Shown one piece after another: positions 17,086 through 41,100 of a stretch of 64,000 nucleotides of DNA. Position numbers and translations under genes: made by a program. The notes below the pieces were generated by a model. That model ran no database searches. It was not told the origin of the DNA and was given only the letters and a program-made list of their open reading frames with translations. Location of the stretch: positions 62,001 to 126,000 of IMG/VR virus record IMGVR_UViG_3300035698_035310. The stretch is one strand, 5' to 3'. Numbering within the stretch: the stretch's first letter is position 1; the number at the start of each line of letters is the position of its first letter.

Positions 17086-17152
17086 TCTATTGACATCTCC
17101 GCACATTTATGTTATATTGGAATCATTATTAACACAAAGAAAGGATAATATC

Positions 17153-17590
17153 ATGTTGAATAAACTGTCCGCTGCAACCATCCAAGCACGTAAAGATAAA
17201 AACGGAGACGCTAAATTATTGGTTACGTTTCTCTCCGAAGTTCGAATGCGTGCCAAAGATGATGGCAATCGTGAAGTGACTGACACTGATATCGTTAAAG
17301 TTGCGCAAAAATTCATGAAATCAGCAAAAGAAACAGTAGGCATTCTTCAAAAAGACGATAGCCGACCAGATGCCCTTACAGCCGCACTACGTGAAATCGA
17401 AGTGCTTGATGCGTATATTCCTACACTTATGGATGAAGACGCTACACGGGCTGCTGTAGCCGCTGCAATCGAAGCAACTGGCGCTACCGATATGTCTGAT
17501 ATGGGTAGAATTATGGGTGAATTGAAAAAATCACACGGCGTAACCATTAATATGGGTCTTGCTTCCGGTATTTTGAAAACGTCATTCTAA
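17153..17590 (+). CDS. GatB/YqeY domain protein
   Basis: ARKDK...EIEVLDAYIP...DMGRIMGELK; own promoter TTGACA(17090)-N17-TATATT; start moved to the ATG after AAGGA. Confidence 0.9.
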   Translation: MLNKLSAATIQARKDKNGDAKLLVTFLSEVRMRAKDDGNREVTDTDIVKVAQKFMKSAKETVGILQKDDSRPDALTAALREIEVLDAYIPTLMDEDATRAAVAAAIEATGATDMSDMGRIMGELKKSHGVTINMGLASGILKTSF

Positions 17591-18064: not shown

Positions 18065-18397
18065 ATGAAGTTTTCATTTAATATGGATATGTATGGCGCA
18101 TTCAATACTAAACTCGACTGGCAATATGAACAACATGGCGAAGGTGACGTATTGATTACCGTGTATCCTACCGAAGAAGCCGATAGTGGTGTAGCTTCAG
18201 TGTTGTCATTCGAAGAAATGTTCACAGAACTCGTTTCGTTGAATATGCTGGTCGGGAAAGACGTTTTTCCTAAAGAAGCAGATAAAATGGAAATGGTGGA
18301 TGAATTATATCGTATTCATGAAAGTTTTATGGATGCATTTAACGCCGCTAAAGATCGTGTGGTTGATGCTAAAGTATCTAAAATTAAAAAGAAATAA
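18065..18397 (+). CDS. hypothetical protein
   Basis: AAGGAG SD. Confidence 0.7.
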   Translation: MKFSFNMDMYGAFNTKLDWQYEQHGEGDVLITVYPTEEADSGVASVLSFEEMFTELVSLNMLVGKDVFPKEADKMEMVDELYRIHESFMDAFNAAKDRVVDAKVSKIKKK

Positions 18398-18426
18398 TTG
18401 ACAGAAAGAGGTAGTTGAGGTAATAT
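18398..18426 (+). promoter_or_regulatory. sigma70 promoter for the tRNA
   Basis: TTGACA-N17-TAATAT. Confidence 0.75.
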
Positions 18427-18447: not shown

Positions 18448-18528
18448 GCTGGTAACGCATAGTGGGGGTGCAGCGTGCTCATAACGCGCCGACGAAAGTC
18501 CGGGTTGGTTCGATTCCAACTATCAGTA
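18448..18528 (+). tRNA. tRNA with CAT anticodon (Met or Ile2), long variable arm, no encoded CCA
   Basis: Acceptor GCTGGTA/TATCAGT; D stem GCAT/GTGC; anticodon arm GCGTG-CTCATAA-CGCGC; variable GAC-GAAA-GTC; T arm GTTGG-TTCGATT-CCAAC; terminator-like GTTGGC-ttta-GCCGAC+T run at ~18542-18567. Confidence 0.85.
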
Positions 18529-18548
18529 CATATAAGAAATGGTTGGCT

Positions 18549-19229
18549 TTAGCCGACTATTTTTTTGACTTCAATAAAAGCACTTTCTGGTGAGAAATAA
18601 CGATCTTCAAATATGACTACATTCCATCCATTTTCTTTGAATAGTTTTTGTTTGATTCGGTCTCTATTTTGAACTTGTTTTAAACTATGCACCAAGCCTA
18701 CCATTTCTTTATAATGCCATGGGCCATTCCATAGGATTGCTATTTTATGATCATTTAGTATAATGTCTGCGTCCCATCCATCTACTAAATGTTTATTGTG
18801 GTCTACGTTGTTGTATTTTTGATGACATAAATCATATAATGCCATTTCATCTTTACTTCGCAAACATCGTTTTTGTGCGGATATTTTGCCGCCTATAAGA
18901 CCACCTTTTTTGCCTGCTGCACGTAGTCTATTATTGAAACAACTTGTAGAACAAGTTTTGCGTTTTCTATTTTTCGTTGGATGGTTTTTTGACGGTGTGT
19001 TATAAAACTTGACACCACAACTATTACACTCGCACCATATTATTGGCGAGTAATCACCATCGATGCCGTTATATTTAAGAACGGATAAACGTGTTTTATT
19101 TTTACTGTGTTCTGAACGTTTTCTATTTTTGTTGTTGAATGTCGCGGCACATTGGCGGCTACAATACTTGCGTCTATGATCGTTTGTTTCAAACTCATTT
19201 CCACATTGTTCACATTTTTTGATTTTCAT
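18549..19229 (-). CDS. homing-endonuclease-like protein (Zn-finger repeats + PD-(D/E)XK/Vsr-like domain)
   Basis: CEQCGNEF..YCSRQC, CNSCG..TCSTSC; SKDE...WDADI...AILWNGPWHY...D..K...GWNV. Confidence 0.75.
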   Translation of the reverse strand: MKIKKCEQCGNEFETNDHRRKYCSRQCAATFNNKNRKRSEHSKNKTRLSVLKYNGIDGDYSPIIWCECNSCGVKFYNTPSKNHPTKNRKRKTCSTSCFNNRLRAAGKKGGLIGGKISAQKRCLRSKDEMALYDLCHQKYNNVDHNKHLVDGWDADIILNDHKIAILWNGPWHYKEMVGLVHSLKQVQNRDRIKQKLFKENGWNVVIFEDRYFSPESAFIEVKKIVG

Positions 19230-19265
19230 TTTGACTTACCCTAGTTAAACAGTTATAAATAATGC

Positions 19266-19328
19266 AGCGGGACAGTCTGTCACCCTAGTCAGATTTCCTA
19301 TTTGTTCGAAGCATTTAGGATTACCGCT
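19266..19328 (+). ncRNA. candidate ~63-nt three-way-junction small RNA
   Basis: Promoter TTGACT(19231)-N17-TATAAA(TA); stems AGCGG/CCGCT, AGTCTG/CAGATT, TCCTA/TAGGA; G-U pairs favour the + strand. Confidence 0.5.
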
Positions 19329-19340
19329 ATTAGTATTTAT

Positions 19341-20138
19341 TCAAGTGAATATTTTAAATGCAGGATTTTTTTGTATATTTTCCATCCTTTTTTCTGCTAT
19401 TTCTATATATTTTTCTTCTAAGTCTATACCAATGAAAGACCGATTGTTTTTGAGGCAAGCTACGCCTGTTGTTCCGCTACCCATGAATGGGTCTAATACT
19501 ACGCCTTGTTCCGGTGATAACAGTTTGATCAACCATGATGCTAAATTTTCTGGATATTGCGCTGGATGTGTATTAAATTTGTCTTTGTTAGATTCATGTG
19601 TCCCGACTTCGACGTAATCTTTGCATCTCGCGATTCCTGATTTGGCGGTGCTTACGCTATCGATATATTCATTAACGCCTTTCACTGATTCCATGCCTAT
19701 TCTATCCGAAACCACACCATTCGCTTTAGGATCGCAATAGCTACGCTGATCTAATGAAAACCAATGTATGCTTTCCCAACTTCTTCTAGGGCGATAGTTG
19801 CTACCTAATGGTGCAGATGTAGGTTTAATCCATATCAATTCTTCACACTCGCGCCAACCATCTTCACGTATTGCTAGTCTCATTTTTAATGTATAATCAC
19901 TGATTTGACCTTCTTTGATATGTGGTCTAATCACGATTGCCACATTACCGGCTGGTTTAAGAATTCGTTTGACTTGTTGCATCCATTTTACAGTCCATTC
20001 AGGGTAATCGTGTTCATTGATTCCGTTGTATAATCCATCGCGTTGTTCGGCATACGGTGGTGAAGTTAACACCAAGTCTACAGAATTATCTTCTATATTT
20101 GTTATTTGTTCTAATAAATCACCTTTAAATATAATCAA
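19341..20138 (-). CDS. DNA methyltransferase, beta class (N4-cytosine type)
   Basis: DLVLTSPPY catalytic motif before HPAQYP and VLDPFMGSGTT SAM motif; likely TTG start at 20138 (GGAG SD, ATAAATA upstream); ORF track start 20180. Confidence 0.92.
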   Translation of the reverse strand: MIIFKGDLLEQITNIEDNSVDLVLTSPPYAEQRDGLYNGINEHDYPEWTVKWMQQVKRILKPAGNVAIVIRPHIKEGQISDYTLKMRLAIREDGWRECEELIWIKPTSAPLGSNYRPRRSWESIHWFSLDQRSYCDPKANGVVSDRIGMESVKGVNEYIDSVSTAKSGIARCKDYVEVGTHESNKDKFNTHPAQYPENLASWLIKLLSPEQGVVLDPFMGSGTTGVACLKNNRSFIGIDLEEKYIEIAEKRMENIQKNPAFKIFT

Positions 20139-20398
20139 TTTTAGCACTCCAATAAAATAATTTCCTATTGTATTTATCATTATTAAATACGGTGTTTATT
20201 ATATCAATATGTATATATATCAAATGGTTAGACCCTTGCGCAAAAATTCAATTTCATCATTTAGTTAGTTTTTGATTTTATGCGCAACCATGATTTTTGA
20301 AAATAATTAAAAACAATGCTTGACAATATATAATAATGGATATATGGTGTATATTATATAAATCCAATAATTGAAACTATACAATGAGGTATTAAAAA

Positions 20399-22913: not shown

Positions 22914-23861
22914 ATGTATGATCGCAAATTAAAAAATCTCGCGAGACAAAAAATTCTTGAATATATGGCAATAGATGATGTAATTGTTGGTGATAGTATA
23001 TGGTTTCCTGCCTCGCAAGCATTATGTGTATTACAGGCACAACAAATGGGTTTGCTGACTCAAAATACCATATTGGTAGAGAAAGATGCTTCAATAATTG
23101 ACGATTTTGATCAAATAACTGAACATCTTCCAAATAGAATCATTCATCATGGTGAATTGAGTGCTCTAAAATTAATTAATGACGTATCTTATGCATTTTT
23201 TGATTTAAATGGATGCATGGATGAAAAAATAGCCCGATGGGTTGTCGAAAATTTTATACCATATGTTAAATTCGGTGGAATTTATTCATTTAATTATTTA
23301 TATGGCAATCGTTCTAATATATTTCAGCCTAAAATATTATCAGCATTGAAGAAATTGACAATTTATAAACAACTTAAAAAATATATGAATGAAGAAGATG
23401 ATTTGATAATGGGTCCGTTAGCGCTTTTACATTGTTTGTTTGACGATTTAGATGTATATCATAATGAGCCTATATATTATTGTGACACGGTTCCAATGTG
23501 TACATATACGTTGGAAATTGTATCTGATAAAAAATCTATCAGAGCATGGCCCACCATTGATGAACTAATTGACATGATGGATAATCCATCGCCCATCAGA
23601 CCTGTGAAATCACACAGACCTGTAAAACCCGCGACAATAACGTCGCATATACCAAGGAGAAAGAATATGACTGCAACGCAACAAATTGATGCTCTTGTTA
23701 AGAGTGGCAAAATTACAAAAAAAAGTGCTGGTGCATATAAAGCCAATATCACTAGAAAACATCGTGTTATTGATAATGATAAATCGTTATCATCTGGTAG
23801 CGCGGCGGCAAAAAAAGCTCATATTTCGAGAAAGATTCTATCCTCTGCTAAAGGGATTTAA
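22914..23861 (+). CDS. Rossmann-fold methyltransferase-like protein with basic C-terminal tail
   Basis: ILVEKD, HHGEL, YAFFDLNG, GGIYSFNY strand pattern; tail with AGAYKANITRK/AAAKKAHISRK repeats. Confidence 0.5.
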   Translation: MYDRKLKNLARQKILEYMAIDDVIVGDSIWFPASQALCVLQAQQMGLLTQNTILVEKDASIIDDFDQITEHLPNRIIHHGELSALKLINDVSYAFFDLNGCMDEKIARWVVENFIPYVKFGGIYSFNYLYGNRSNIFQPKILSALKKLTIYKQLKKYMNEEDDLIMGPLALLHCLFDDLDVYHNEPIYYCDTVPMCTYTLEIVSDKKSIRAWPTIDELIDMMDNPSPIRPVKSHRPVKPATITSHIPRRKNMTATQQIDALVKSGKITKKSAGAYKANITRKHRVIDNDKSLSSGSAAAKKAHISRKILSSAKGI

Positions 23862-27250: not shown

Positions 27251-27481
27251 ATGTCTGATTTAACCAATGTTACTACACATGATGCATGGATGGCTTTATT
27301 TAATATTAGAAAAAAAGATTTAGAGTCTGTATTAACACTACTAACAAAAAACAATACACTAGGAATTGATAATTCAAAAATTTCTAAAATTATGGAACAT
27401 CTTGATACCGCTTTTGATGGCATCGAAGCACAAGTTATTATTGCGCAGCGCGACAAACAAATGGAAAAAGGAAAATTATAA
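27251..27481 (+). CDS. hypothetical protein
   Basis: AAGGAG SD. Confidence 0.65.
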   Translation: MSDLTNVTTHDAWMALFNIRKKDLESVLTLLTKNNTLGIDNSKISKIMEHLDTAFDGIEAQVIIAQRDKQMEKGKL

Positions 27482-28480
27482 ATGTCGCATTCTTCTAAAA
27501 AGGTAATTTATTATGCTGCGGTAGCCAATTTTGGTATTGCTATTGCTAAATTTGGTGGTGCATGGCTTACTGGTAGTGCCGCTATGATGTCAGAAGGAAT
27601 TCACTCTTTGGTGGATACCAGCAATCAAGGATTGCTTTTATTGGGGATGAAAAAAGCGAGTAAACCAGCAGATGCCAAACATCCTTCTGGTTATGGTCGT
27701 GAACTTTATTTTTATGCATTTATTGTAGCCATTCTTATTTTTGCAGTTGGTGCAGGTGTATCATTATTGGAAGGTGTAGAAGCATTGATGCATGGTAAAG
27801 CATTATTAATGGGATCGGTTGCATTCGTGGGTTTCAATATTGGATATCAATACATTGTTCTTGGTATTTTATTTTTTGGTATGTTGTTGGAAGGGAAATC
27901 GTGGTTGGTTGCATATCAGGAATTTACTGGATCGTTACCAAATGGTGTAGGTGTGTGGAAAGGTCTTACTGATGTTAAAGACCCGACTGTAGCAGTTATT
28001 TTAGTTGAAGACACTGCTGCTATGTTGGGTTTGTTTGTAGCATTTATTGGTGTAGGGGCAGCATATTATTTTAATAATTCGTTGCTTGATGCTGGTGCAA
28101 CTATTATTATTGGTGTTATTTTAGCATCGGTATCAATGTTTTTGGCGTATGAATGTAAATCGTTATTGATCGGCGAAGCAGCATCACCAGAAGTCCAAAA
28201 AAGTATTGCTGATATTATTTCTGAAATGCCGGGTGTTATTAAAGCGAACGAAGTTATTACTGAACATATTGGGCCAAAAGAAGTTAGAGTATTGATTTCA
28301 TTGGATTTTAAGGATTCTACTTCATCGACGCAAATTGAAGCAATTTCTAGCAGATTGGAAAAGCAAATTAAAAAGAAACACGTCGATGTTACGAGAGTGT
28401 TTGTTGAAGCACAAAGCAGTTATTCGCATGCACGCGATGCTGAAACCGAAGCGGCTGAACATAATGGATTATACGGATGA
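27482..28480 (+). CDS. cation diffusion facilitator (CDF) transporter
   Basis: TGSAAMMSEGIHSLVD, HPSGYGRE, ED-A metal site, ZT dimerisation domain. Confidence 0.93.
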   Translation: MSHSSKKVIYYAAVANFGIAIAKFGGAWLTGSAAMMSEGIHSLVDTSNQGLLLLGMKKASKPADAKHPSGYGRELYFYAFIVAILIFAVGAGVSLLEGVEALMHGKALLMGSVAFVGFNIGYQYIVLGILFFGMLLEGKSWLVAYQEFTGSLPNGVGVWKGLTDVKDPTVAVILVEDTAAMLGLFVAFIGVGAAYYFNNSLLDAGATIIIGVILASVSMFLAYECKSLLIGEAASPEVQKSIADIISEMPGVIKANEVITEHIGPKEVRVLISLDFKDSTSSTQIEAISSRLEKQIKKKHVDVTRVFVEAQSSYSHARDAETEAAEHNGLYG

Positions 28481-29968: not shown

Positions 29969-30033
29969 AGGACACCAATACAAGTATTGGCAGATAAAAA
30001 ATTCGACTTGGAATATGATTGAAGGGATATAAA

Positions 30034-30966
30034 ATGATTAATAAAGACGCAAAAATTTTAGTAGCAGTATCTGGTGGTGTTGACTCTGTCTATATGTTAC
30101 ATTTGTTATTGAAACTTGGATATTCAAATCTTGGTGTTGTTAATTTCAATCATCAACATCGCGATGAATCTATGATGGAACAACAATTTGTTAGAACGTT
30201 GGCAGAAAATAGCAAACTCGTATTTCACGCCGCAGGTACTAATGTAGATACTCATTGTAAAATGAGAAACGAATCATTCGAGTTAGTGGCAAGAGATTTG
30301 CGGCGCACGTATTTTAATGCTATTATTGAAGAGCATGAATATGAATGGCTTGCATTGGGTCAACATAGTGATGACCAAGCAGAAACTGTTTTATTGAATT
30401 TGTTTCGTGGTTCGGGCGTCCATGGATTGGCTGGAATGCTTGGTGAAGATGAAGAACAAAAAATCTTTCGACCACTACTTCAAATGTCAAAGCATGAAAT
30501 TTATACAAGTGCGATTGCTGCTAATCTCGAATGGCACGAAGATCACACCAATCATGAAACGGAACACGATAGAAATTGGTTGCGCAATGAAATTATTCCA
30601 CAGTTGGAAACTCGCCGCAGTGGATTAAAAACAGTATTGAATGATACTGCTACACGTATGCAAGATATGAGTGATTATATCAAAAGTGAAGCACATCATT
30701 GGTTTGAAAATTATTTTTTAGGAACTGGTTATCAACTTTCAGCCAATCATTACATGGTAGAACATAAAGTTTTACGTGCTGAAATTTTAGGTTTTATTTG
30801 GGTATACTGTAATGGTTCACGTAAAAACTTTAACAACAAAGTAGTGTTTGAAATTGAAAAATGGTTATCGTCTAATCCAGAAGGTGGAACCAAAGTCTAT
30901 TTTGGTGACACATATTTGACTATTAAACATGGATTGGTAACAGTAATTTATGATAAAACAACGTAG
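30034..30966 (+). CDS. tilS: tRNA(Ile)-lysidine synthetase
   Basis: VAVSGGVDS PP-loop, NH..R, ARDLR, HSDDQAETVL, RGSG..GL, RPLL, EDHTN..RN.LR. Confidence 0.93.
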   Translation: MINKDAKILVAVSGGVDSVYMLHLLLKLGYSNLGVVNFNHQHRDESMMEQQFVRTLAENSKLVFHAAGTNVDTHCKMRNESFELVARDLRRTYFNAIIEEHEYEWLALGQHSDDQAETVLLNLFRGSGVHGLAGMLGEDEEQKIFRPLLQMSKHEIYTSAIAANLEWHEDHTNHETEHDRNWLRNEIIPQLETRRSGLKTVLNDTATRMQDMSDYIKSEAHHWFENYFLGTGYQLSANHYMVEHKVLRAEILGFIWVYCNGSRKNFNNKVVFEIEKWLSSNPEGGTKVYFGDTYLTIKHGLVTVIYDKTT

Positions 30967-31287: not shown

Positions 31288-32538
31288 ATGTCGCATGTTT
31301 TTAAAAATGATTTAATGGTGGATTTGACCGATAGAGGTTTTATACACTCTACTACGGCTGACACCAATCTCGAAAACGCATTAAGTGAGCCATGCGTCAT
31401 TTACTGTGGATTTGATTGCACTGCTGATTCTTTGCATATTGGTAGTTTAGTCCAACTTAAAATGTTAAAAAAGTTTAAAGACGCTGGTCATGTAGTGGTT
31501 CCAGTTATTGGAACTGCTACGACTAAAATTGGCGATCCATCTGGTCGCGATACGGCAAGACCGTTACTTACAGATGAAGAAATTGATCGTAATGCTAGGG
31601 GCATCGAATTCAGCATTTCTAATGTGGTTGATGCTGATGAAGTTATACACAATCATGAATTTATTGAAGAACTTGACGTCGTTGATTTCATGCGCAATAT
31701 CGGTAGTAAGATATCCATCAACACAATGATGAATCTTGAAAGCGTTCGTTCGAGAATGGAAGGCGACGAAGGAATGTCATTTCTTGAATTTTCATACAGT
31801 TTATTTCAAGCATACGATTTCTACAATATCATCAATGAAAACCCAACCATGCATGTAATTCAAATAGGCGGCAGTGATCAATGGGGTAATATCACCATGG
31901 GTTTGGAGTTGGCTAAAAAAATGTGGGATAGCAAAAATCCAATGAAAGAAGCATTTGGCATTACAACGCCATTGTTGACATCGTCTAATGGTCAAAAAAT
32001 GGGCAAAACTGCGGATGGTGTAGTATGGCTCAATGGGAGCAAAATGACTGCATTGGATTTCTGGCAATTTTGGAGAAATATTCCAGATGATGATCTATTC
32101 CATTTGTTGCGATTATTTAGCGATTCAAGTCTTGAATTAATAAACCATATGGATGAGCACGGCAGTGAAACAGATGGTTACATCAACATGATGAAAAAAT
32201 CATTCGCTTGTGAAATGACTTCTATGATTCGCGGTAACGATGAATCATTAAAAGCGGCAAAAATGGCAGAAAGCATATTTGAAGATAAATCAGATATTGA
32301 TTTACCAGAACATAAAGTTGATCGAGAATGCATGGTTAGTAATCTTGCATTGACTGTCTTTTTACGCGAAGAAGGATTTATGAAATCATCCGGCGAAGCC
32401 AAACGCATGATTCAACAAGGTGGAATTCGTATAGACAACGTTAAGGTCGACGATGTCAATACTATTATATCATCAAAAGGTGAATCATTCAAACTAAGCA
32501 TAGGACAAAAGAAACATTACAGGATTGAATTTGAATGA
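31288..32538 (+). CDS. tyrS: tyrosine--tRNA ligase
   Basis: YCGFDCTADSLHIG (HIGH), IGDPSG, QIGGSDQWGNI, KMGKT (KMSKS), C-terminal S4 domain; promoter TTGACG(31231)-N17-TATGAT. Confidence 0.96.
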   Translation: MSHVFKNDLMVDLTDRGFIHSTTADTNLENALSEPCVIYCGFDCTADSLHIGSLVQLKMLKKFKDAGHVVVPVIGTATTKIGDPSGRDTARPLLTDEEIDRNARGIEFSISNVVDADEVIHNHEFIEELDVVDFMRNIGSKISINTMMNLESVRSRMEGDEGMSFLEFSYSLFQAYDFYNIINENPTMHVIQIGGSDQWGNITMGLELAKKMWDSKNPMKEAFGITTPLLTSSNGQKMGKTADGVVWLNGSKMTALDFWQFWRNIPDDDLFHLLRLFSDSSLELINHMDEHGSETDGYINMMKKSFACEMTSMIRGNDESLKAAKMAESIFEDKSDIDLPEHKVDRECMVSNLALTVFLREEGFMKSSGEAKRMIQQGGIRIDNVKVDDVNTIISSKGESFKLSIGQKKHYRIEFE

Positions 32539-38127: not shown

Positions 38128-41100
38128 ATGGCAGAAGACAAGCGTTATATCATAAGAGTTAAAAGTGAATCAGTATTAGGCACATTTTTGTCTGTTGCTA
38201 TGAACTTGGGTATTAAAATAGAGCATGTTTATCGACGTGTATTTTATGGGTTTTCTGCCCCATTAACAGAAGAACAATTTGAAATTATATCGGCTGACGC
38301 TCGAGTGATAGCAATCGAAGAAGCAACAGCGGTGTTTTGTTATGCACGACAAGATGAAGCACCTTGGCACTTGGATCGTATAGATCAACGTGAATTACCA
38401 TTAAGTGGGTCATATACTTATAGTTCTGATGGAACGGGCGTTATTGCATATGTTTTAGATTCTGGTTGTGTATTTTATAATGAAAATAAAACTGCATCTG
38501 ATACCGCCAATTTTGATCATATAGATTTCAGTGGAAGAGTCTCACCAGTAAATGAATTGGATGGTGTTGGTATACCAAAGACTGGAGTTGCGTTTGATCC
38601 CATATATAACAGACTACAAGCGACTGATCCAGAAAATGGTAGATTGTCATCGCCGCGTGGATTTGATCATTTTGGTCACGGAACTCACGTTGCTGGTATA
38701 ATCGGTAGTGACACTTATGGTGTTGCTAAAAATGTAGATATTAGAACGGCAAAAGTATTGGATATATTTGGTGCTGGCACAACATCTGATGTCATTGCTG
38801 GTATTGAAGCTATATTATCCGATTTTGCAAATAATAATCCATCGGTATTGCCTGCTGTATGTAATATGAGTTTAGGTACATCAGCACCATCATCACCAGC
38901 ACCATTTGGTGGATTTGAACTAGCAATTGAAGCATTAGTTGCTGCGGGTGTGACAGTTGTTGTTGCCGCTGGCAATGAAGGTCAAGATGCAAATAATATA
39001 TCACCCGCCAGAATGGATAGTGTTATAACCGTTGGTGCTACATCTAAAGTTGTTGATTCAAATGGCGTAGTTATAGAAGATACTATTGCTAATTTTTCTA
39101 ATTTTGGCGATACTGAAGATATCATTGCAGATGATACATTTGGTTTTAATGATTCTGTTGCGACAAATACGGGTTCGGCGCTTGATATGTTTGCTCCGGG
39201 TGTTCGTATCGTATCAACATATAAAACTAATCCTACTTCAACTAATACGTTCAGCGGAACGAGTATGGCATCACCATTGGTTGCTGGTGTTGCTGCATTG
39301 GTGTTAGAAAATAATCCCACCTTGTCACCAACCGATGTTTTGGAATTAATGATAACCAACTCAGTAGAAGATATTATTACCGGTGTTCCAGTTGGAACTC
39401 CGAATCGTATGGTATTTTCTACATTTGTTGATCACGAAATAGAATGGACAACACCTGCGGGTGATTTGGGTGATTATGCAGAAGGATACACTTTAAACCC
39501 ACAAGTAAAAGTTGAAGCGGTTGGATTTAGTGGTCAGTTAATTACTTATTCCAATCAAGGTGGTGGACTACCAATCGGAATTACTGTTAATGCGGCAACG
39601 GGCGTATTGGAGGGCGTTGTTGGTGCGGTATTATTAGACACTGTTTATAATTTCACCATACGTGCATCCGATAGTTCTGGATTTGTTGATAGAGCATTTA
39701 GTTTAACCATATTAGATAGCGAACTCCCACCAAGATGGGTTACAGCGTCTAATTTATCAACTGTTGACGAGGGTGAATTATTATCTATACAATTTTCCGC
39801 AACCTCGCAAAATTTTCCACAAAACCCCGATATAACATACGATTCGATTGATCCAGATACTGATGGCGTTATACCATTACCGTATGGTTGGAGCATAACA
39901 GCAGAAGGATTGATGACTGGTGATATACCTGTAGTAATTAATAACGAACACGATATAGAATTTAATATTAGAGCATTTGACGATAGCGTGTTTTCTGATC
40001 AATTATTTTCATTAACAATCAATCAATCGTCCTTTACCGAACCACCATTATGGCAAACTAGTGCAAACTTAGGATCGATAGTTAAATATGAGCCAGTAGC
40101 ATTAGAAGTAGTTGCCACTGATGCGGATGGAAATCCAAGACCTATAACATATCATGAAACCTTTACATCTGGTGATGGATCAATATTTGGTGTTAATAAT
40201 AGCTTGCCACTAGGTCTAACATTACAAAATGATGGAGTTATCACGGGTGCTTTCACTGGTTTATTAACTGATGGGGTGTTAGATAATCCTACCACTTTTG
40301 ATAATATTACAACAACTTTTGATAATAATACAACATTATCTGATAGTGATTTAGCCGTATTTGAATTTCAAATATTTGCAGAGGATGGATCACACGTAAT
40401 AGGTAAAATATTTACTATATCAATTCACAATGCAGCCGAAAATGAACCAGTAAATTGGATAACGCCGTCGCATAGAATTGCCATATTCGATGCATTGGTA
40501 TTCTCTTCTGTTACCGTTGAAGCTACTGATATTGATTCATCACCAAATGATTTGATATATACATTAGTTTCGGGTGATATTCCGTTAGGAATGAATTTAG
40601 ATAATAATACTGGTGAAATATTTGGTGTTCCAGAAAATATTAATGATATTGAAAAATTGTCTATATTTGGCATAGAAGCATCAGATGGATTATCTAAGGT
40701 TGTGCGAACTTTTTCTATAACTGTGTTACGGTCTAACAGACAGCCCGTATGGATAACTCCAATGGGTGCATTAATGCAGCCTATCAATGAAGGTACATTG
40801 TTTTCTAAACAATTAGAAGCAACGGACCCTAATACAAACGATGCATTGAGATATAGAGTTATAACTATTGAGCCATTTGAAGTGCAATTAGATAATAACA
40901 CAACTACATTTGATGGCGATACAACTACTATATCAGATACGATAGATTTGAATAGCGAATTGCCTAATGATATATCATTGAGTTTATCTGGCATGCTTAC
41001 TGGTGTAATAAATGATATTAATGAAGATACAACATATGAATTTACTGTGCGAGTTGATGACAGTTTATCAAATATAGATTATCTTTTTTCTGATAGAACA

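What the first reader, a model, noticed from the sequence alone, without database searches (positions are those of the whole stretch)
18448..18528. Non-canonical class II-like tRNA with CAU anticodon, in a genome carrying its own TilS
Seen: a CAU anticodon on a body with a 14-nt variable region (GAC-GAAA-GTC stem), A instead of the invariant U8, G at position 48, two G-U pairs in the acceptor stem, a possible eighth acceptor pair (T18447-A18528) giving an 8/5 fold, and no CCA. It has its own promoter and terminator. Established: long variable arms normally mark Leu/Ser/Tyr/Sec tRNAs, while Met/Ile2 tRNAs are class I; TilS converts CAU to the AUA-reading form. Inference: a private TilS/tRNA-Ile2 pair for an AUA-rich genome that evades host anticodon nucleases, or a tRNA charged by an anticodon-blind synthetase.
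Basis: partly seen in the sequence, partly recalled or inferred. Interest (0 to 1): 0.62.

Follow-up and report, generated by a model that had tools for sequence, protein, structure and literature searches.

The report
Phage CAU tRNA with extra hairpin
A giant phage carries a separately transcribed tRNA with the Met/Ile2 anticodon CAU and a small extra hairpin; that hairpin turns out to be common in phage tRNAs of many amino acids, so it does not mark a leucine/serine/tyrosine tRNA, and this one is most likely the AUA-reading isoleucine tRNA served by the phage's own TilS enzyme.

Summary
Window 18448-18528 (+) is a tRNA gene (ARAGORN; Rfam 38.2 bits). It has a CAU anticodon, a 14-nt variable region (GAC-GAAA-GTC hairpin), A8, G48, two G·U acceptor pairs and no CCA. 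A promoter-like site lies upstream and a strong hairpin-U-tract terminator downstream.

The class II reading does not hold. The same hairpin occurs in at least 93 phage tRNAs with Thr, Cys, Lys, Asn, Trp, Arg, Gly, His, Ile and Met/Ile2 anticodons. Their discriminator bases follow the anticodon's amino acid. Three more such tRNAs lie in this genome. About 30 distinct 86-89-nt CAU tRNAs with this hairpin form a covarying phage family. None was found as a tRNA in 185,579 bacterial species genomes.

The Ile2 reading is supported but not proven:
- The phage encodes a short, type II TilS 11.5 kb downstream.
- AUA is 30.7 per 1000 codons.
- Two other phage lineages place a lone, Ile2-like CAU tRNA 1.3-2.4 kb upstream of the same TilS clade.
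- The window tRNA lacks the Met-type C3-G70.

Against it, a second CAU tRNA in the genome looks more Ile-like, so elongator Met remains a serious rival. Nuclease evasion is untested.

The parts
18398..18426 (+). Sigma-70-like promoter TTGACA-17 nt-TAATAT. It starts directly after the stop codon of the upstream ORF and ends 22 nt before the tRNA 5' end.
   Evidence: 10 of 12 consensus positions. The number of such matches in the region is not above shuffles, so the support is positional only.
18448..18528 (+). tRNA gene, anticodon CAU (18480-18482). It has a 14-nt variable region with a GAC-GAAA-GTC hairpin (18491-18500), A8, G15·G48 and A73, and no encoded CCA.
   Evidence: ARAGORN; Rfam 38.2 bits; 56.8 bits on the model of the phage V-arm CAU family.
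18534..18565 (.). Intrinsic-terminator-like element made of an A-tract, a hairpin and a U-tract. It is shared with the converging endonuclease gene, so it is probably bidirectional.
   Evidence: Fold of -15.8 kcal/mol, z -4.97; not listed by the simple terminator scan.
18549..19229 (-). 226-aa HNH/Vsr-like free-standing endonuclease gene that converges on the tRNA 3' end.
   Evidence: phrog_1271 HNH endonuclease and phrog_7140 intron-encoded nuclease. There are 713 homologues, some named very-short-patch-repair endonuclease. Homologues abut tRNA genes in L161 and L162-164.
19341..20180 (-). N6/N4 DNA methyltransferase, paired with the endonuclease.
   Evidence: PF01555, E 4e-41. The same gene order is seen in the 256-kb relative.
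30019..30966 (+). Short (315 aa, type II) tRNA(Ile)-lysidine synthetase TilS, the proposed modifier of the tRNA.
   Evidence: PF01171, E 2e-44; TIGR02432, 162 bits against a cut-off of 93.6. The family profile best matches the 317-aa Aquifex aeolicus TilS, 1wy5, E 9e-59.
31288..32538 (+). Tyrosyl-tRNA synthetase next to TilS. It is context only and is not proposed to charge this tRNA.
   Evidence: TIGR00234, 324 bits; PF00579.
17090..17590 (+). YqeY/GatB-like protein upstream of the tRNA (translation-related context).
   Evidence: PF09424, E 2e-20; phrog_1460.

Best explanation
The locus is a working, separately transcribed phage tRNA gene with anticodon CAU.

Its long variable region is a 3-bp, GNRA-capped mini-hairpin of a kind that phages attach to tRNAs of many amino acids. 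It is an architectural add-on, not a Leu/Ser/Tyr identity mark.

The most likely job is tRNA-Ile2. In outline:
1. The transcript is trimmed by RNase P and a 3' nuclease.
2. Because the gene has no CCA and no phage CCA enzyme was found, the host enzyme adds CCA.
3. C34 is converted to lysidine by the phage's own type II TilS, which reads the anticodon arm and elbow rather than the acceptor stem.
4. Host IleRS then charges it, and it reads the phage's very frequent AUA codons.

Shown here: the gene, its fold, the TilS, the AUA load, the recurrence of the hairpin and the recurrence of TilS-CAU tRNA linkage. Inferred: expression, processing, lysidinylation, Ile charging, and any benefit of the hairpin.
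For: The tRNA is real. Transcription signals.

The hairpin is not an identity mark:
- A GAC-GAAA-GTC plus T-arm pattern with no anticodon fixed hit at least 119 viral contigs.
- It gave 93 tRNAs spread over about 19 anticodons, 15 each for Thr(UGU) and Cys.
- Discriminators of long-V tRNAs follow the anticodon's isotype: Asn G 5/5, His C 3/3, Cys U 2/2, Ile A 7/7.
- With that hairpin excluded, 36 of 852 other non-Leu/Ser/Tyr phage tRNAs still have long V arms.
- Three more lie in this genome: Asn, Trp and Gly.

A selected CAU family with the same hairpin exists:
- 30 distinct sequences; 98.8% of cells paired; 19 of 25 pairs with changes on both sides; 0 of 500 shuffles as good.
- The 8-14 and 15-48 tertiary pairs covary.
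- Its 3:70 pair is G-C or A-U in 30 of 30 and never C-G. Silva et al. 2006 (PMC1635315) found that pattern to exclude Met and fMet.

Pointers to Ile2 for the window tRNA:
- TilS is in the genome.
- AUA is 30.7 per 1000 codons.
- No MetRS or IleRS is encoded by the phage, so host enzymes must charge it.
- U3-A70 and C2-G71 replace the Met-type C3-G70 and G2-C71. U3-A70 is the second commonest pair in bona fide phage Ile(GAU/UAU) tRNAs, 9 of 30.
- The acceptor-only log-odds, Ile versus Met-type, is +6.1 bits.

Linkage:
- In a complete 543-kb phage, the only CAU tRNA among about 60 tRNAs has an Ile2-like body. It sits with an Ile(GAU) tRNA 2.4 kb upstream of a TilS of the same clade.
- In L162-164, a G3-C70/C4-G69 CAU tRNA lies 1.3 kb upstream of a TilS homologue, with the same endonuclease between them.
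- The closest relative keeps a 196-bp gap at the syntenic spot.
Against:
- No orthologue of this exact tRNA was found, so its own conservation is untested.
- The genome has a second CAU tRNA (39739-39813, with CCA, in the main tRNA array). It scores more Ile-like: +16.9 acceptor-only and +7.3 to +15.4 overall, against -9.1 to -1.1 overall for the window tRNA.
- The window tRNA has G4-C69 and G5·U68, not the C4-G69/C5-G68 frequent in Ile2.
- A8·A14 and G15·G48 break the two tertiary pairs that covary in the family.
- Its fold is no more stable than shuffles (z -0.40).
- It lacks CCA, unlike 30 of 32 tRNAs in the genome.
- Three other contigs with this TilS clade have no tRNA within 10 kb upstream.
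- A 336-kb phage has a V-arm CAU tRNA but no TilS.
- The Ile/Met classifier is weak, with about 70% leave-one-out accuracy.
Confidence: 0.5

Rival explanations
1. It is an elongator tRNA-Met. C34 stays unmodified, host MetRS charges it through the CAU anticodon, and it reads AUG. The other CAU tRNA (genome 39739-39813) is then the TilS substrate.
For: - Two CAU tRNAs in one genome split naturally into Met and Ile2.
- The 39739 tRNA has C4-G69 and C29-G41 and scores clearly Ile-like, while the window tRNA scores slightly Met-like once the D and T arms are included.
- In L004/L005/L008 the V-arm CAU tRNA coexists with an initiator-like tRNA and with a CAU tRNA whose acceptor stem matches a phage Ile(GAU) tRNA. 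By elimination, that leaves Met for the V-arm one.
- A 336-kb phage with a V-arm CAU tRNA has no TilS.
- From established knowledge: MetRS accepts almost any tRNA body carrying CAU.
Against: - It lacks C3-G70 and G2-C71, which Met and fMet tRNAs of 234 bacterial genomes usually have.
- 23 of 37 short phage CAU tRNAs have C3-G70, against 1 of 32 V-arm ones.
- It is the tRNA nearest to TilS, and the linkage recurs.
- The overall-profile scores are confounded by the unusual D arm, A8 and C9.
Confidence: 0.3
2. It is a decaying or non-translational tRNA gene. For example, it may be a remnant kept only as the landing site of the neighbouring homing-endonuclease/methylase cassette, or serve as a processing signal.
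For: - No CCA, unlike nearly all tRNAs of this genome.
- A8·A14 and G15·G48 tertiary mismatches, and four G·U pairs in the stems.
- The fold is no better than shuffles.
- No orthologue was found.
- An HNH-like endonuclease abuts it, and homologues abut tRNA genes elsewhere.
Against: - All four stems are intact and the anticodon loop and T loop are canonical. Scores are 38 bits on Rfam and 57 bits on the family model.
- A promoter and a strong terminator are placed exactly around it.
- Other tRNAs of this phage are just as loose: the 39739 tRNA has a U·U mismatch, and G1·U72 also occurs in its Val tRNAs.
- Two family members also have A8·A14.
- From memory, G15·G48 occurs naturally in E. coli tRNA-Cys, and CCA-less phage tRNA genes are known in T4.
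Confidence: 0.12
3. It is a miscoding tRNA. The class II-like body is charged by LeuRS, SerRS or the phage TyrRS, so AUG (or AUA) is read as another amino acid.
For: - It has a long variable region and A73.
- LeuRS and SerRS ignore the anticodon.
- The phage has a TyrRS but no tRNA-Tyr.
- Allo-tRNAs with mismatched anticodons exist in bacteria and phages.
Against: - The E. coli LeuRS set needs A15-U48 and A20a. Here the pair is G15·G48 and the short D loop has no 20a.
- The SerRS-type G73 and a long V stem are absent: it has A73 and a 3-bp stem.
- TyrRS needs U35; here it is A35.
- The same hairpin sits on tRNAs whose discriminators fit their own anticodons.
- Proteome-wide misreading of AUG would hurt the phage itself.
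Confidence: 0.04

Closest known systems
Bacterial tRNA-Ile2(CAU) with TilS (E. coli ileX/TilS; Aquifex aeolicus type II TilS, PDB 1wy5)
   Same: - CAU anticodon, loop CUCAUAA with A37 and A38, and A73.
- A TilS encoded in the same genome.
- The phage enzyme is the short type II form, like the Aquifex one. That form does not read the acceptor stem (PMC11947777).
   Different: - The 14-nt variable hairpin replaces a 5-nt loop.
- A8 replaces U8.
- G4-C69 and G5·U68 replace C4-G69 and C5-G68.
- No CCA is encoded.
- The tRNA and enzyme are phage-encoded and lie 11.5 kb apart.
TilS genes of jumbo phages (Pseudomonas phages PA5oct and MIJ3, PMC6892783)
   Same: A large phage that carries its own lysidine synthetase alongside many tRNAs.
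   Different: - Only about 29% identity over the N-terminal domain.
- The clade here is about 300 aa and is found on uncultured 110-570-kb contigs.
- No link to a hairpin-bearing CAU tRNA has been described.
Phage family of 86-89-nt CAU tRNAs with the GAC-GAAA-GTC variable hairpin
   Same: Identical anticodon loop and variable hairpin, the A8-C9-G10-C11 start, A26 and A73. The window tRNA is the best hit of the family model in its own genome.
   Different: - The family has a 3-bp D stem with a 12-nt loop, A8-U14, A15-U48 or G15-C48, G3-C70 or A3-U70, and an encoded CCA.
- The window tRNA has a 4-bp D stem with a 7-nt loop, A8·A14, G15·G48, U3-A70 and no CCA.
- The model also scores unrelated tRNAs at 50-54 bits, so membership is not shown.
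Allo-tRNAs and other irregular tRNAs (Mukai et al. 2017, PMC5389517)
   Same: Non-canonical tRNA bodies found in bacteria and phages, in which the anticodon and the body type seem to disagree.
   Different: - Allo-tRNAs have 8/4 or 9/3 acceptor/T branches and Ser identity.
- This tRNA has a 7/5 branch, and its relatives keep the identity marks of their anticodons.
Phage tRNA-Tyr of T5 with a distinctive variable loop that escapes Retron-Eco7; SegB homing endonuclease in the T4/T6 tRNA region (PMC13096335, PMC11555353)
   Same: - A precedent that the variable region of a phage tRNA can decide its survival against host tRNA nucleases.
- A precedent that free-standing homing endonucleases sit next to phage tRNA genes.
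   Different: - Those cases concern a genuine class II tRNA-Tyr.
- No nuclease is known or tested for CAU tRNAs here.
- The endonuclease here is HNH/Vsr-like, not GIY-YIG.

Membership tests
tRNA (Rfam RF00005) | Cloverleaf scoring above the family's gathering score of 29 bits | tested here: met
   38.2 bits, E 1e-6, full-length match of positions 1-71; ARAGORN also calls it. The 64-kb gathering scan missed it.
tRNA-Ile2 (lysidine-dependent AUA decoder) | CAU anticodon with A37, A38 and A73 | tested here: met
   Loop CUCAUAA and discriminator A18528. These features are shared with tRNA-Met, so they do not discriminate.
tRNA-Ile2 (lysidine-dependent AUA decoder) | Acceptor marks: G3 or A3 with C70 or U70; C4-G69 and C5-G68 frequent (Silva 2006, PMC1635315) | tested here: not met
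   The window tRNA has U3-A70, G4-C69 and G5·U68. However, U3-A70 occurs in 9 of 30 bona fide phage Ile(GAU/UAU) tRNAs, and type II TilS does not read the acceptor stem.
tRNA-Ile2 (lysidine-dependent AUA decoder) | A TilS available to modify it | tested here: met
   Phage TilS at 30019-30966.
tRNA-Ile2 (lysidine-dependent AUA decoder) | Lysidine at position 34 and charging with Ile | not testable with these tools
   This needs tRNA mass spectrometry or in vitro assays.
Elongator tRNA-Met | C3-G70 (and G2-C71) in the acceptor stem together with CAU and A73 | tested here: not met
   The window tRNA has U3-A70 and C2-G71. C3-G70 is usual in Met and fMet. It is present in 23 of 37 short phage CAU tRNAs.
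Initiator tRNA-fMet | 1:72 mismatch, A11-U24, and R29-G30-G31 with Y39-C40-Y41 | tested here: not met
   The window tRNA has G1·U72, C11-G24, and G29-U30-G31 with C39-G40-C41 (criteria).
Class II tRNA-Leu | A73 plus the A15-U48 Levitt pair, G18G19 and A20a (E. coli set, PMC9976931) | tested here: not met
   A73 and GG are present, but the Levitt pair is G15·G48 and the 7-nt D loop has no 20a.
Class II tRNA-Ser / tRNA-Tyr | Ser: G73 and a long variable stem. Tyr: U35 (G34) with A73 and a variable arm | tested here: not met
   The window tRNA has A73, a 3-bp variable stem and anticodon C34-A35-U36. The identity rules are taken from PMC9976931 and from general knowledge.
tRNA-Sec (8/5) | 8-bp acceptor stem, 6-bp D stem, UCA anticodon, G73 | tested here: not met
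   Only a possible U(-1)-A73 pair exists. The D stem is 4 bp, the anticodon is CAU and the discriminator is A73.
   The model score of 56.8 bits does not discriminate, since other tRNAs of the genome reach 50-54 bits.

The most novel reading that the evidence does not exclude
The GNRA-capped variable-arm mini-hairpin is a phage-wide device. Grafted onto tRNAs of many amino acids, it marks them as phage tRNAs. It might let them escape host nucleases or modification enzymes that act on the variable loop and core, or it might be a handle for phage enzymes. In the CAU case, it would let a private type II TilS, which touches the anticodon stem and elbow, pick the phage tRNA-Ile2 without reading its acceptor stem.
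Probability: 0.15. Interest if true: 0.8.

Novelty: new variant of a known kind. Interest (0 to 1): 0.55.

Why it matters
- Textbook tRNA classification ties long variable arms to Leu, Ser, Tyr and Sec. Here a compact hairpin arm recurs in phage tRNAs for Thr, Cys, Lys, Asn, Trp, Gly, His, Ile and Met/Ile2, with identity marks that fit the anticodon. One CAU family shows full covariation, including a swapped 8-14 tertiary pair.
- I found no description of this in the papers I could search.
- It affects how phage tRNAs are annotated. Isotype callers may flag such tRNAs as mismatched or as pseudogenes.
- It offers natural scaffolds for tRNA engineering.
- Together with a phage TilS and an AUA-heavy genome, it gives a concrete and testable case of a virus bringing both the AUA decoder and its modifying enzyme.

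Tried and rejected
- Similar DNA in cultured phages: only the methylase matched.
- Related loci through the neighbouring 154-aa and 836-aa proteins in viral contigs: none.
- DNA of the closest relative (256,814-bp contig, 69-73% protein identity): not retrievable, so conservation of the tRNA there could not be checked.
- Whole-record searches of contigs found by the look-up of encoding contigs: not held.
- Stop-codon recoding as an explanation for the two CTA tRNAs: reading TAG through raises ORF cover less than TGA or TAA do, so code 11 was kept.
- The shared GCU...AGU-A acceptor end of the two CAU tRNAs as an Ile mark: rejected, because the same end occurs on Glu, His, Leu, Arg and Val tRNAs.
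- The family covariance model as a membership test: not discriminating.
- The naive-Bayes Ile/Met profile: only about 70% leave-one-out accuracy, and confounded by the odd D arm.
- TilS-tRNA linkage is not universal: three contigs of the TilS clade have no tRNA within 10 kb upstream.
- The bacterial pattern hits in genome contigs (28, many in Paenibacillus) are not tRNAs.
- No contig taken for human was met. Two loci come from human-gut metagenomes and are microbial or viral contigs.

Full report
**Setting.** The window is bases 62001-126000 of a 359,044-bp viral record, about 36% G+C, which IMG/VR classes as a provirus. Its metagenome contig is 570,750 bp long. The genome holds 32 (ARAGORN) to 36 (Rfam) tRNA genes. 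Nearly all lie at 18-49 kb of the genome, and 30 of 32 encode CCA. The tRNA in question is isolated from that array.

**The observation.** ARAGORN finds one tRNA in the window, at 18448-18529, with anticodon CAT. Rfam's tRNA model gives 38.2 bits (E 1e-6) in a local scan, although the 64-kb gathering scan missed it.
- a 7-bp acceptor stem with G1·U72 and G5·U68;
- A8;
- a 4-bp D stem;
- an anticodon stem with one U·G pair, and loop CUCAUAA;
- a 14-nt variable region, C-GAC-GAAA-GUC-CGG, so position 48 is G;
- a canonical T arm and A73;
- no encoded CCA.

The proposed eighth acceptor pair is possible on paper but has no support. A TTGACA-17-TAATAT site begins right after the stop codon of the upstream ORF (such matches are not enriched over shuffles). 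An A-tract/hairpin/U-tract folds at -15.8 kcal/mol, z -4.97, between the tRNA and the converging gene.

**The long variable arm is not a class II identity mark.**
- Searching viral contigs for the CAU loop plus this hairpin gave 14 loci, 13 of them 86-88-nt CAU tRNAs.
- Those loci gave 93 tRNAs with the hairpin. Thr(UGU) and Cys had 15 each, Lys 13 and Asn 6, followed by Trp, Arg, Gly, Gln, Pro, His and Ile(GAU). Only 19 were ordinary Leu, Ser or Tyr tRNAs.
- Among tRNAs with encoded CCA, the discriminator of long-arm tRNAs follows the anticodon's amino acid: Asn G 5/5, His C 3/3, Cys U 2/2, Ile A 7/7, and Gly U, Trp G and Asp G in one case each. These are therefore tRNAs of their anticodon's isotype carrying an added hairpin.
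- With this particular hairpin set aside, 36 of 852 distinct non-Leu/Ser/Tyr tRNAs in the same loci still have long arms with other small hairpins.
- The window's own genome has three more: Asn at 23684, Trp at 27455 and Gly at 31845. A complete 543-kb relative has ten.
- As controls, the CAU-plus-hairpin pattern matched 28 places in 185,579 bacterial and archaeal species genomes, and none is a tRNA. The hairpin-plus-T-arm pattern matched 0 and 1 genomes in two samples of 401 bacterial genomes.

**A covarying CAU family.** With metagenome contigs added, 30 distinct 86-89-nt CAU tRNAs carry the hairpin.
- On their alignment, 98.8% of cells form standard pairs, and 19 of 25 pairs change on both sides.
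- No shuffle and no slid register comes close.
- The tertiary pairs covary too. Pair 8-14 is A-U in 24, U-A in 4 and other in 2. Pair 15-48 is A-U in 20 and G-C in 8.
- This is a selected, functional tRNA family seen only in viral or metagenome DNA.
- The window tRNA shares its loop, its hairpin and A8. It differs in the D arm, in both tertiary pairs (A8·A14, G15·G48), at 3:70 and in lacking CCA.
- A covariance model of the family ranks the window tRNA first in its genome (56.8 bits), but scores unrelated tRNAs at 50-54 bits. I therefore treat it as a divergent or convergent relative, not a proven member.

**Which amino acid?** Sequence alone cannot separate Ile2 from elongator Met with confidence, and the evidence is mixed.

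For Ile2:
- The phage encodes a TilS of 315 aa (TIGR02432, 162 bits against a cut-off of 93.6). Its family profile best matches the 317-aa type II enzyme of Aquifex. Type II enzymes lack the domain that reads the acceptor stem.
- AUA is 30.7 per 1000 codons and 40% of Ile codons, more frequent than AUG.
- No phage MetRS, IleRS or CCA-adding enzyme was found; there are only a TyrRS and a CysRS.
- Silva et al. found that bacterial Met and fMet tRNAs usually have C3-G70, and that G3, A3, C70 or T70 indicate Ile. The family has G-C or A-U at 3:70 in 30 of 30 members.
- The window tRNA has U3-A70. This is not Met-like, and it is the second commonest pair in phage Ile(GAU/UAU) tRNAs, 9 of 30.
- The linkage recurs. 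In a complete 543-kb phage, the single CAU tRNA among about 60 tRNAs has an Ile2-like body. It follows an Ile(GAU) tRNA and lies 2.4 kb upstream of a TilS of this clade.
- In three small contigs, a CAU tRNA with G3-C70 and C4-G69 lies 1.3 kb upstream of a TilS homologue (46% identity over the 81 residues present). The same HNH-like endonuclease sits between them on the other strand.
- In the window, the arrangement is the same but stretched to 11.5 kb. The closest relative keeps the gene order and a 196-bp gap where the tRNA would be.

Against Ile2:
- The genome's other CAU tRNA (39739-39813) has C4-G69 and scores more Ile-like on every profile I built.
- The window tRNA scores slightly Met-like when the D and T arms are counted. 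Those positions are confounded by its unusual core, and the classifier is weak.
- Three contigs of the TilS clade show no tRNA within 10 kb upstream.
- A 336-kb phage has a V-arm CAU tRNA, no other CAU tRNA and no TilS.

**Other readings.**
- The LeuRS, SerRS, TyrRS, Sec and initiator feature sets all fail (see the membership table).
- A decaying gene cannot be excluded. There is no CCA, there are two broken tertiary pairs, and the fold is no better than shuffles. However, the stems and loops are intact, the transcription signals frame the gene exactly, and other tRNAs of this phage are equally loose.

[quoted passage not shown] Nothing here tests that for CAU tRNAs.

**Verdict.**
- The class II inference is wrong in an instructive way.
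- The pairing of TilS with a tRNA-Ile2 is the best-supported function, at about even odds. Elongator Met is the main rival.
- The wider pattern of hairpin-bearing phage tRNAs seems under-described and is the more interesting result.

Noticed in passing
G000:C1:23684-23769, 27455-27541 and 31845-31928 (own genome, outside the window): Three more tRNAs with class I anticodons (Asn GUU, Trp CCA, Gly UCC) carry long variable-arm hairpins. Their discriminators (G, G, U) fit the anticodon.
   Followed up: partly
G000:C1:126381-126457 (381 nt past the window end): The converse case: a tRNA with the Leu anticodon UAA on a short-variable-loop, class I-shaped body of 74 nt plus CCA.
   Followed up: no
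G000:C1:28369-28446 and 221822-221895: Two tRNAs with the amber-reading anticodon CUA. A crude ORF-cover test gave no sign of TAG recoding: cover is 0.769 under the standard code, 0.781 with TAG read through, and 0.811 and 0.838 with TGA and TAA read through.
   Followed up: partly
L161:3789-4045 (-), a 110,778-bp related contig: Two tandem tRNAs behind one promoter-like site each carry an insertion of about 53 nt in the anticodon loop, with a shared 25-nt core. The flanks read CU-C...AU-AA, so both could be CAU tRNAs split after position 34. No Rfam family matches the insert. They lie next to a homologue of the window's endonuclease.
   Followed up: partly
G000:C1:34932-35039 and 18169-18286: Rfam tRNA hits of 108 and 118 nt in the phage's own genome. 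These look like tRNAs with large internal insertions.
   Followed up: no
window 18549-20180 (-): An HNH/Vsr-like endonuclease plus an N6/N4 DNA methylase form a cassette that converges on the tRNA. Endonuclease homologues (53-55% identity) also abut tRNA genes in two other phage lineages. This suggests a homing element that targets or travels with tRNA genes.
   Followed up: partly
window 31288-32538 (+); G000:C1:153235-154536: The phage encodes a TyrRS but no tRNA-Tyr was found in the genome. It also encodes a CysRS and two tRNA-Cys.
   Followed up: partly
L178 (contig Ga0222634_1000003): The window's sequence lies on a 570,750-bp metagenome contig, while the viral record is a 359,044-bp 'provirus' cut from it. 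Whether the remaining 211 kb is host or phage was not examined.
   Followed up: no
window 27482-28480 (+): A cation-efflux family transporter gene (PF01545) lies in the phage between the tRNA and TilS. It is conserved at about 70-75% (tblastx) upstream of TilS in a 211-kb relative (L160).
   Followed up: no
L019, L036, L042, L095 and L218 (viral and metagenome loci): Five of 13 distinct phage tRNA-Ile(UAU) genes, which are unambiguous AUA decoders, also have long variable arms (89-94 nt in total). AUA decoders therefore seem especially prone to this architecture.
   Followed up: no
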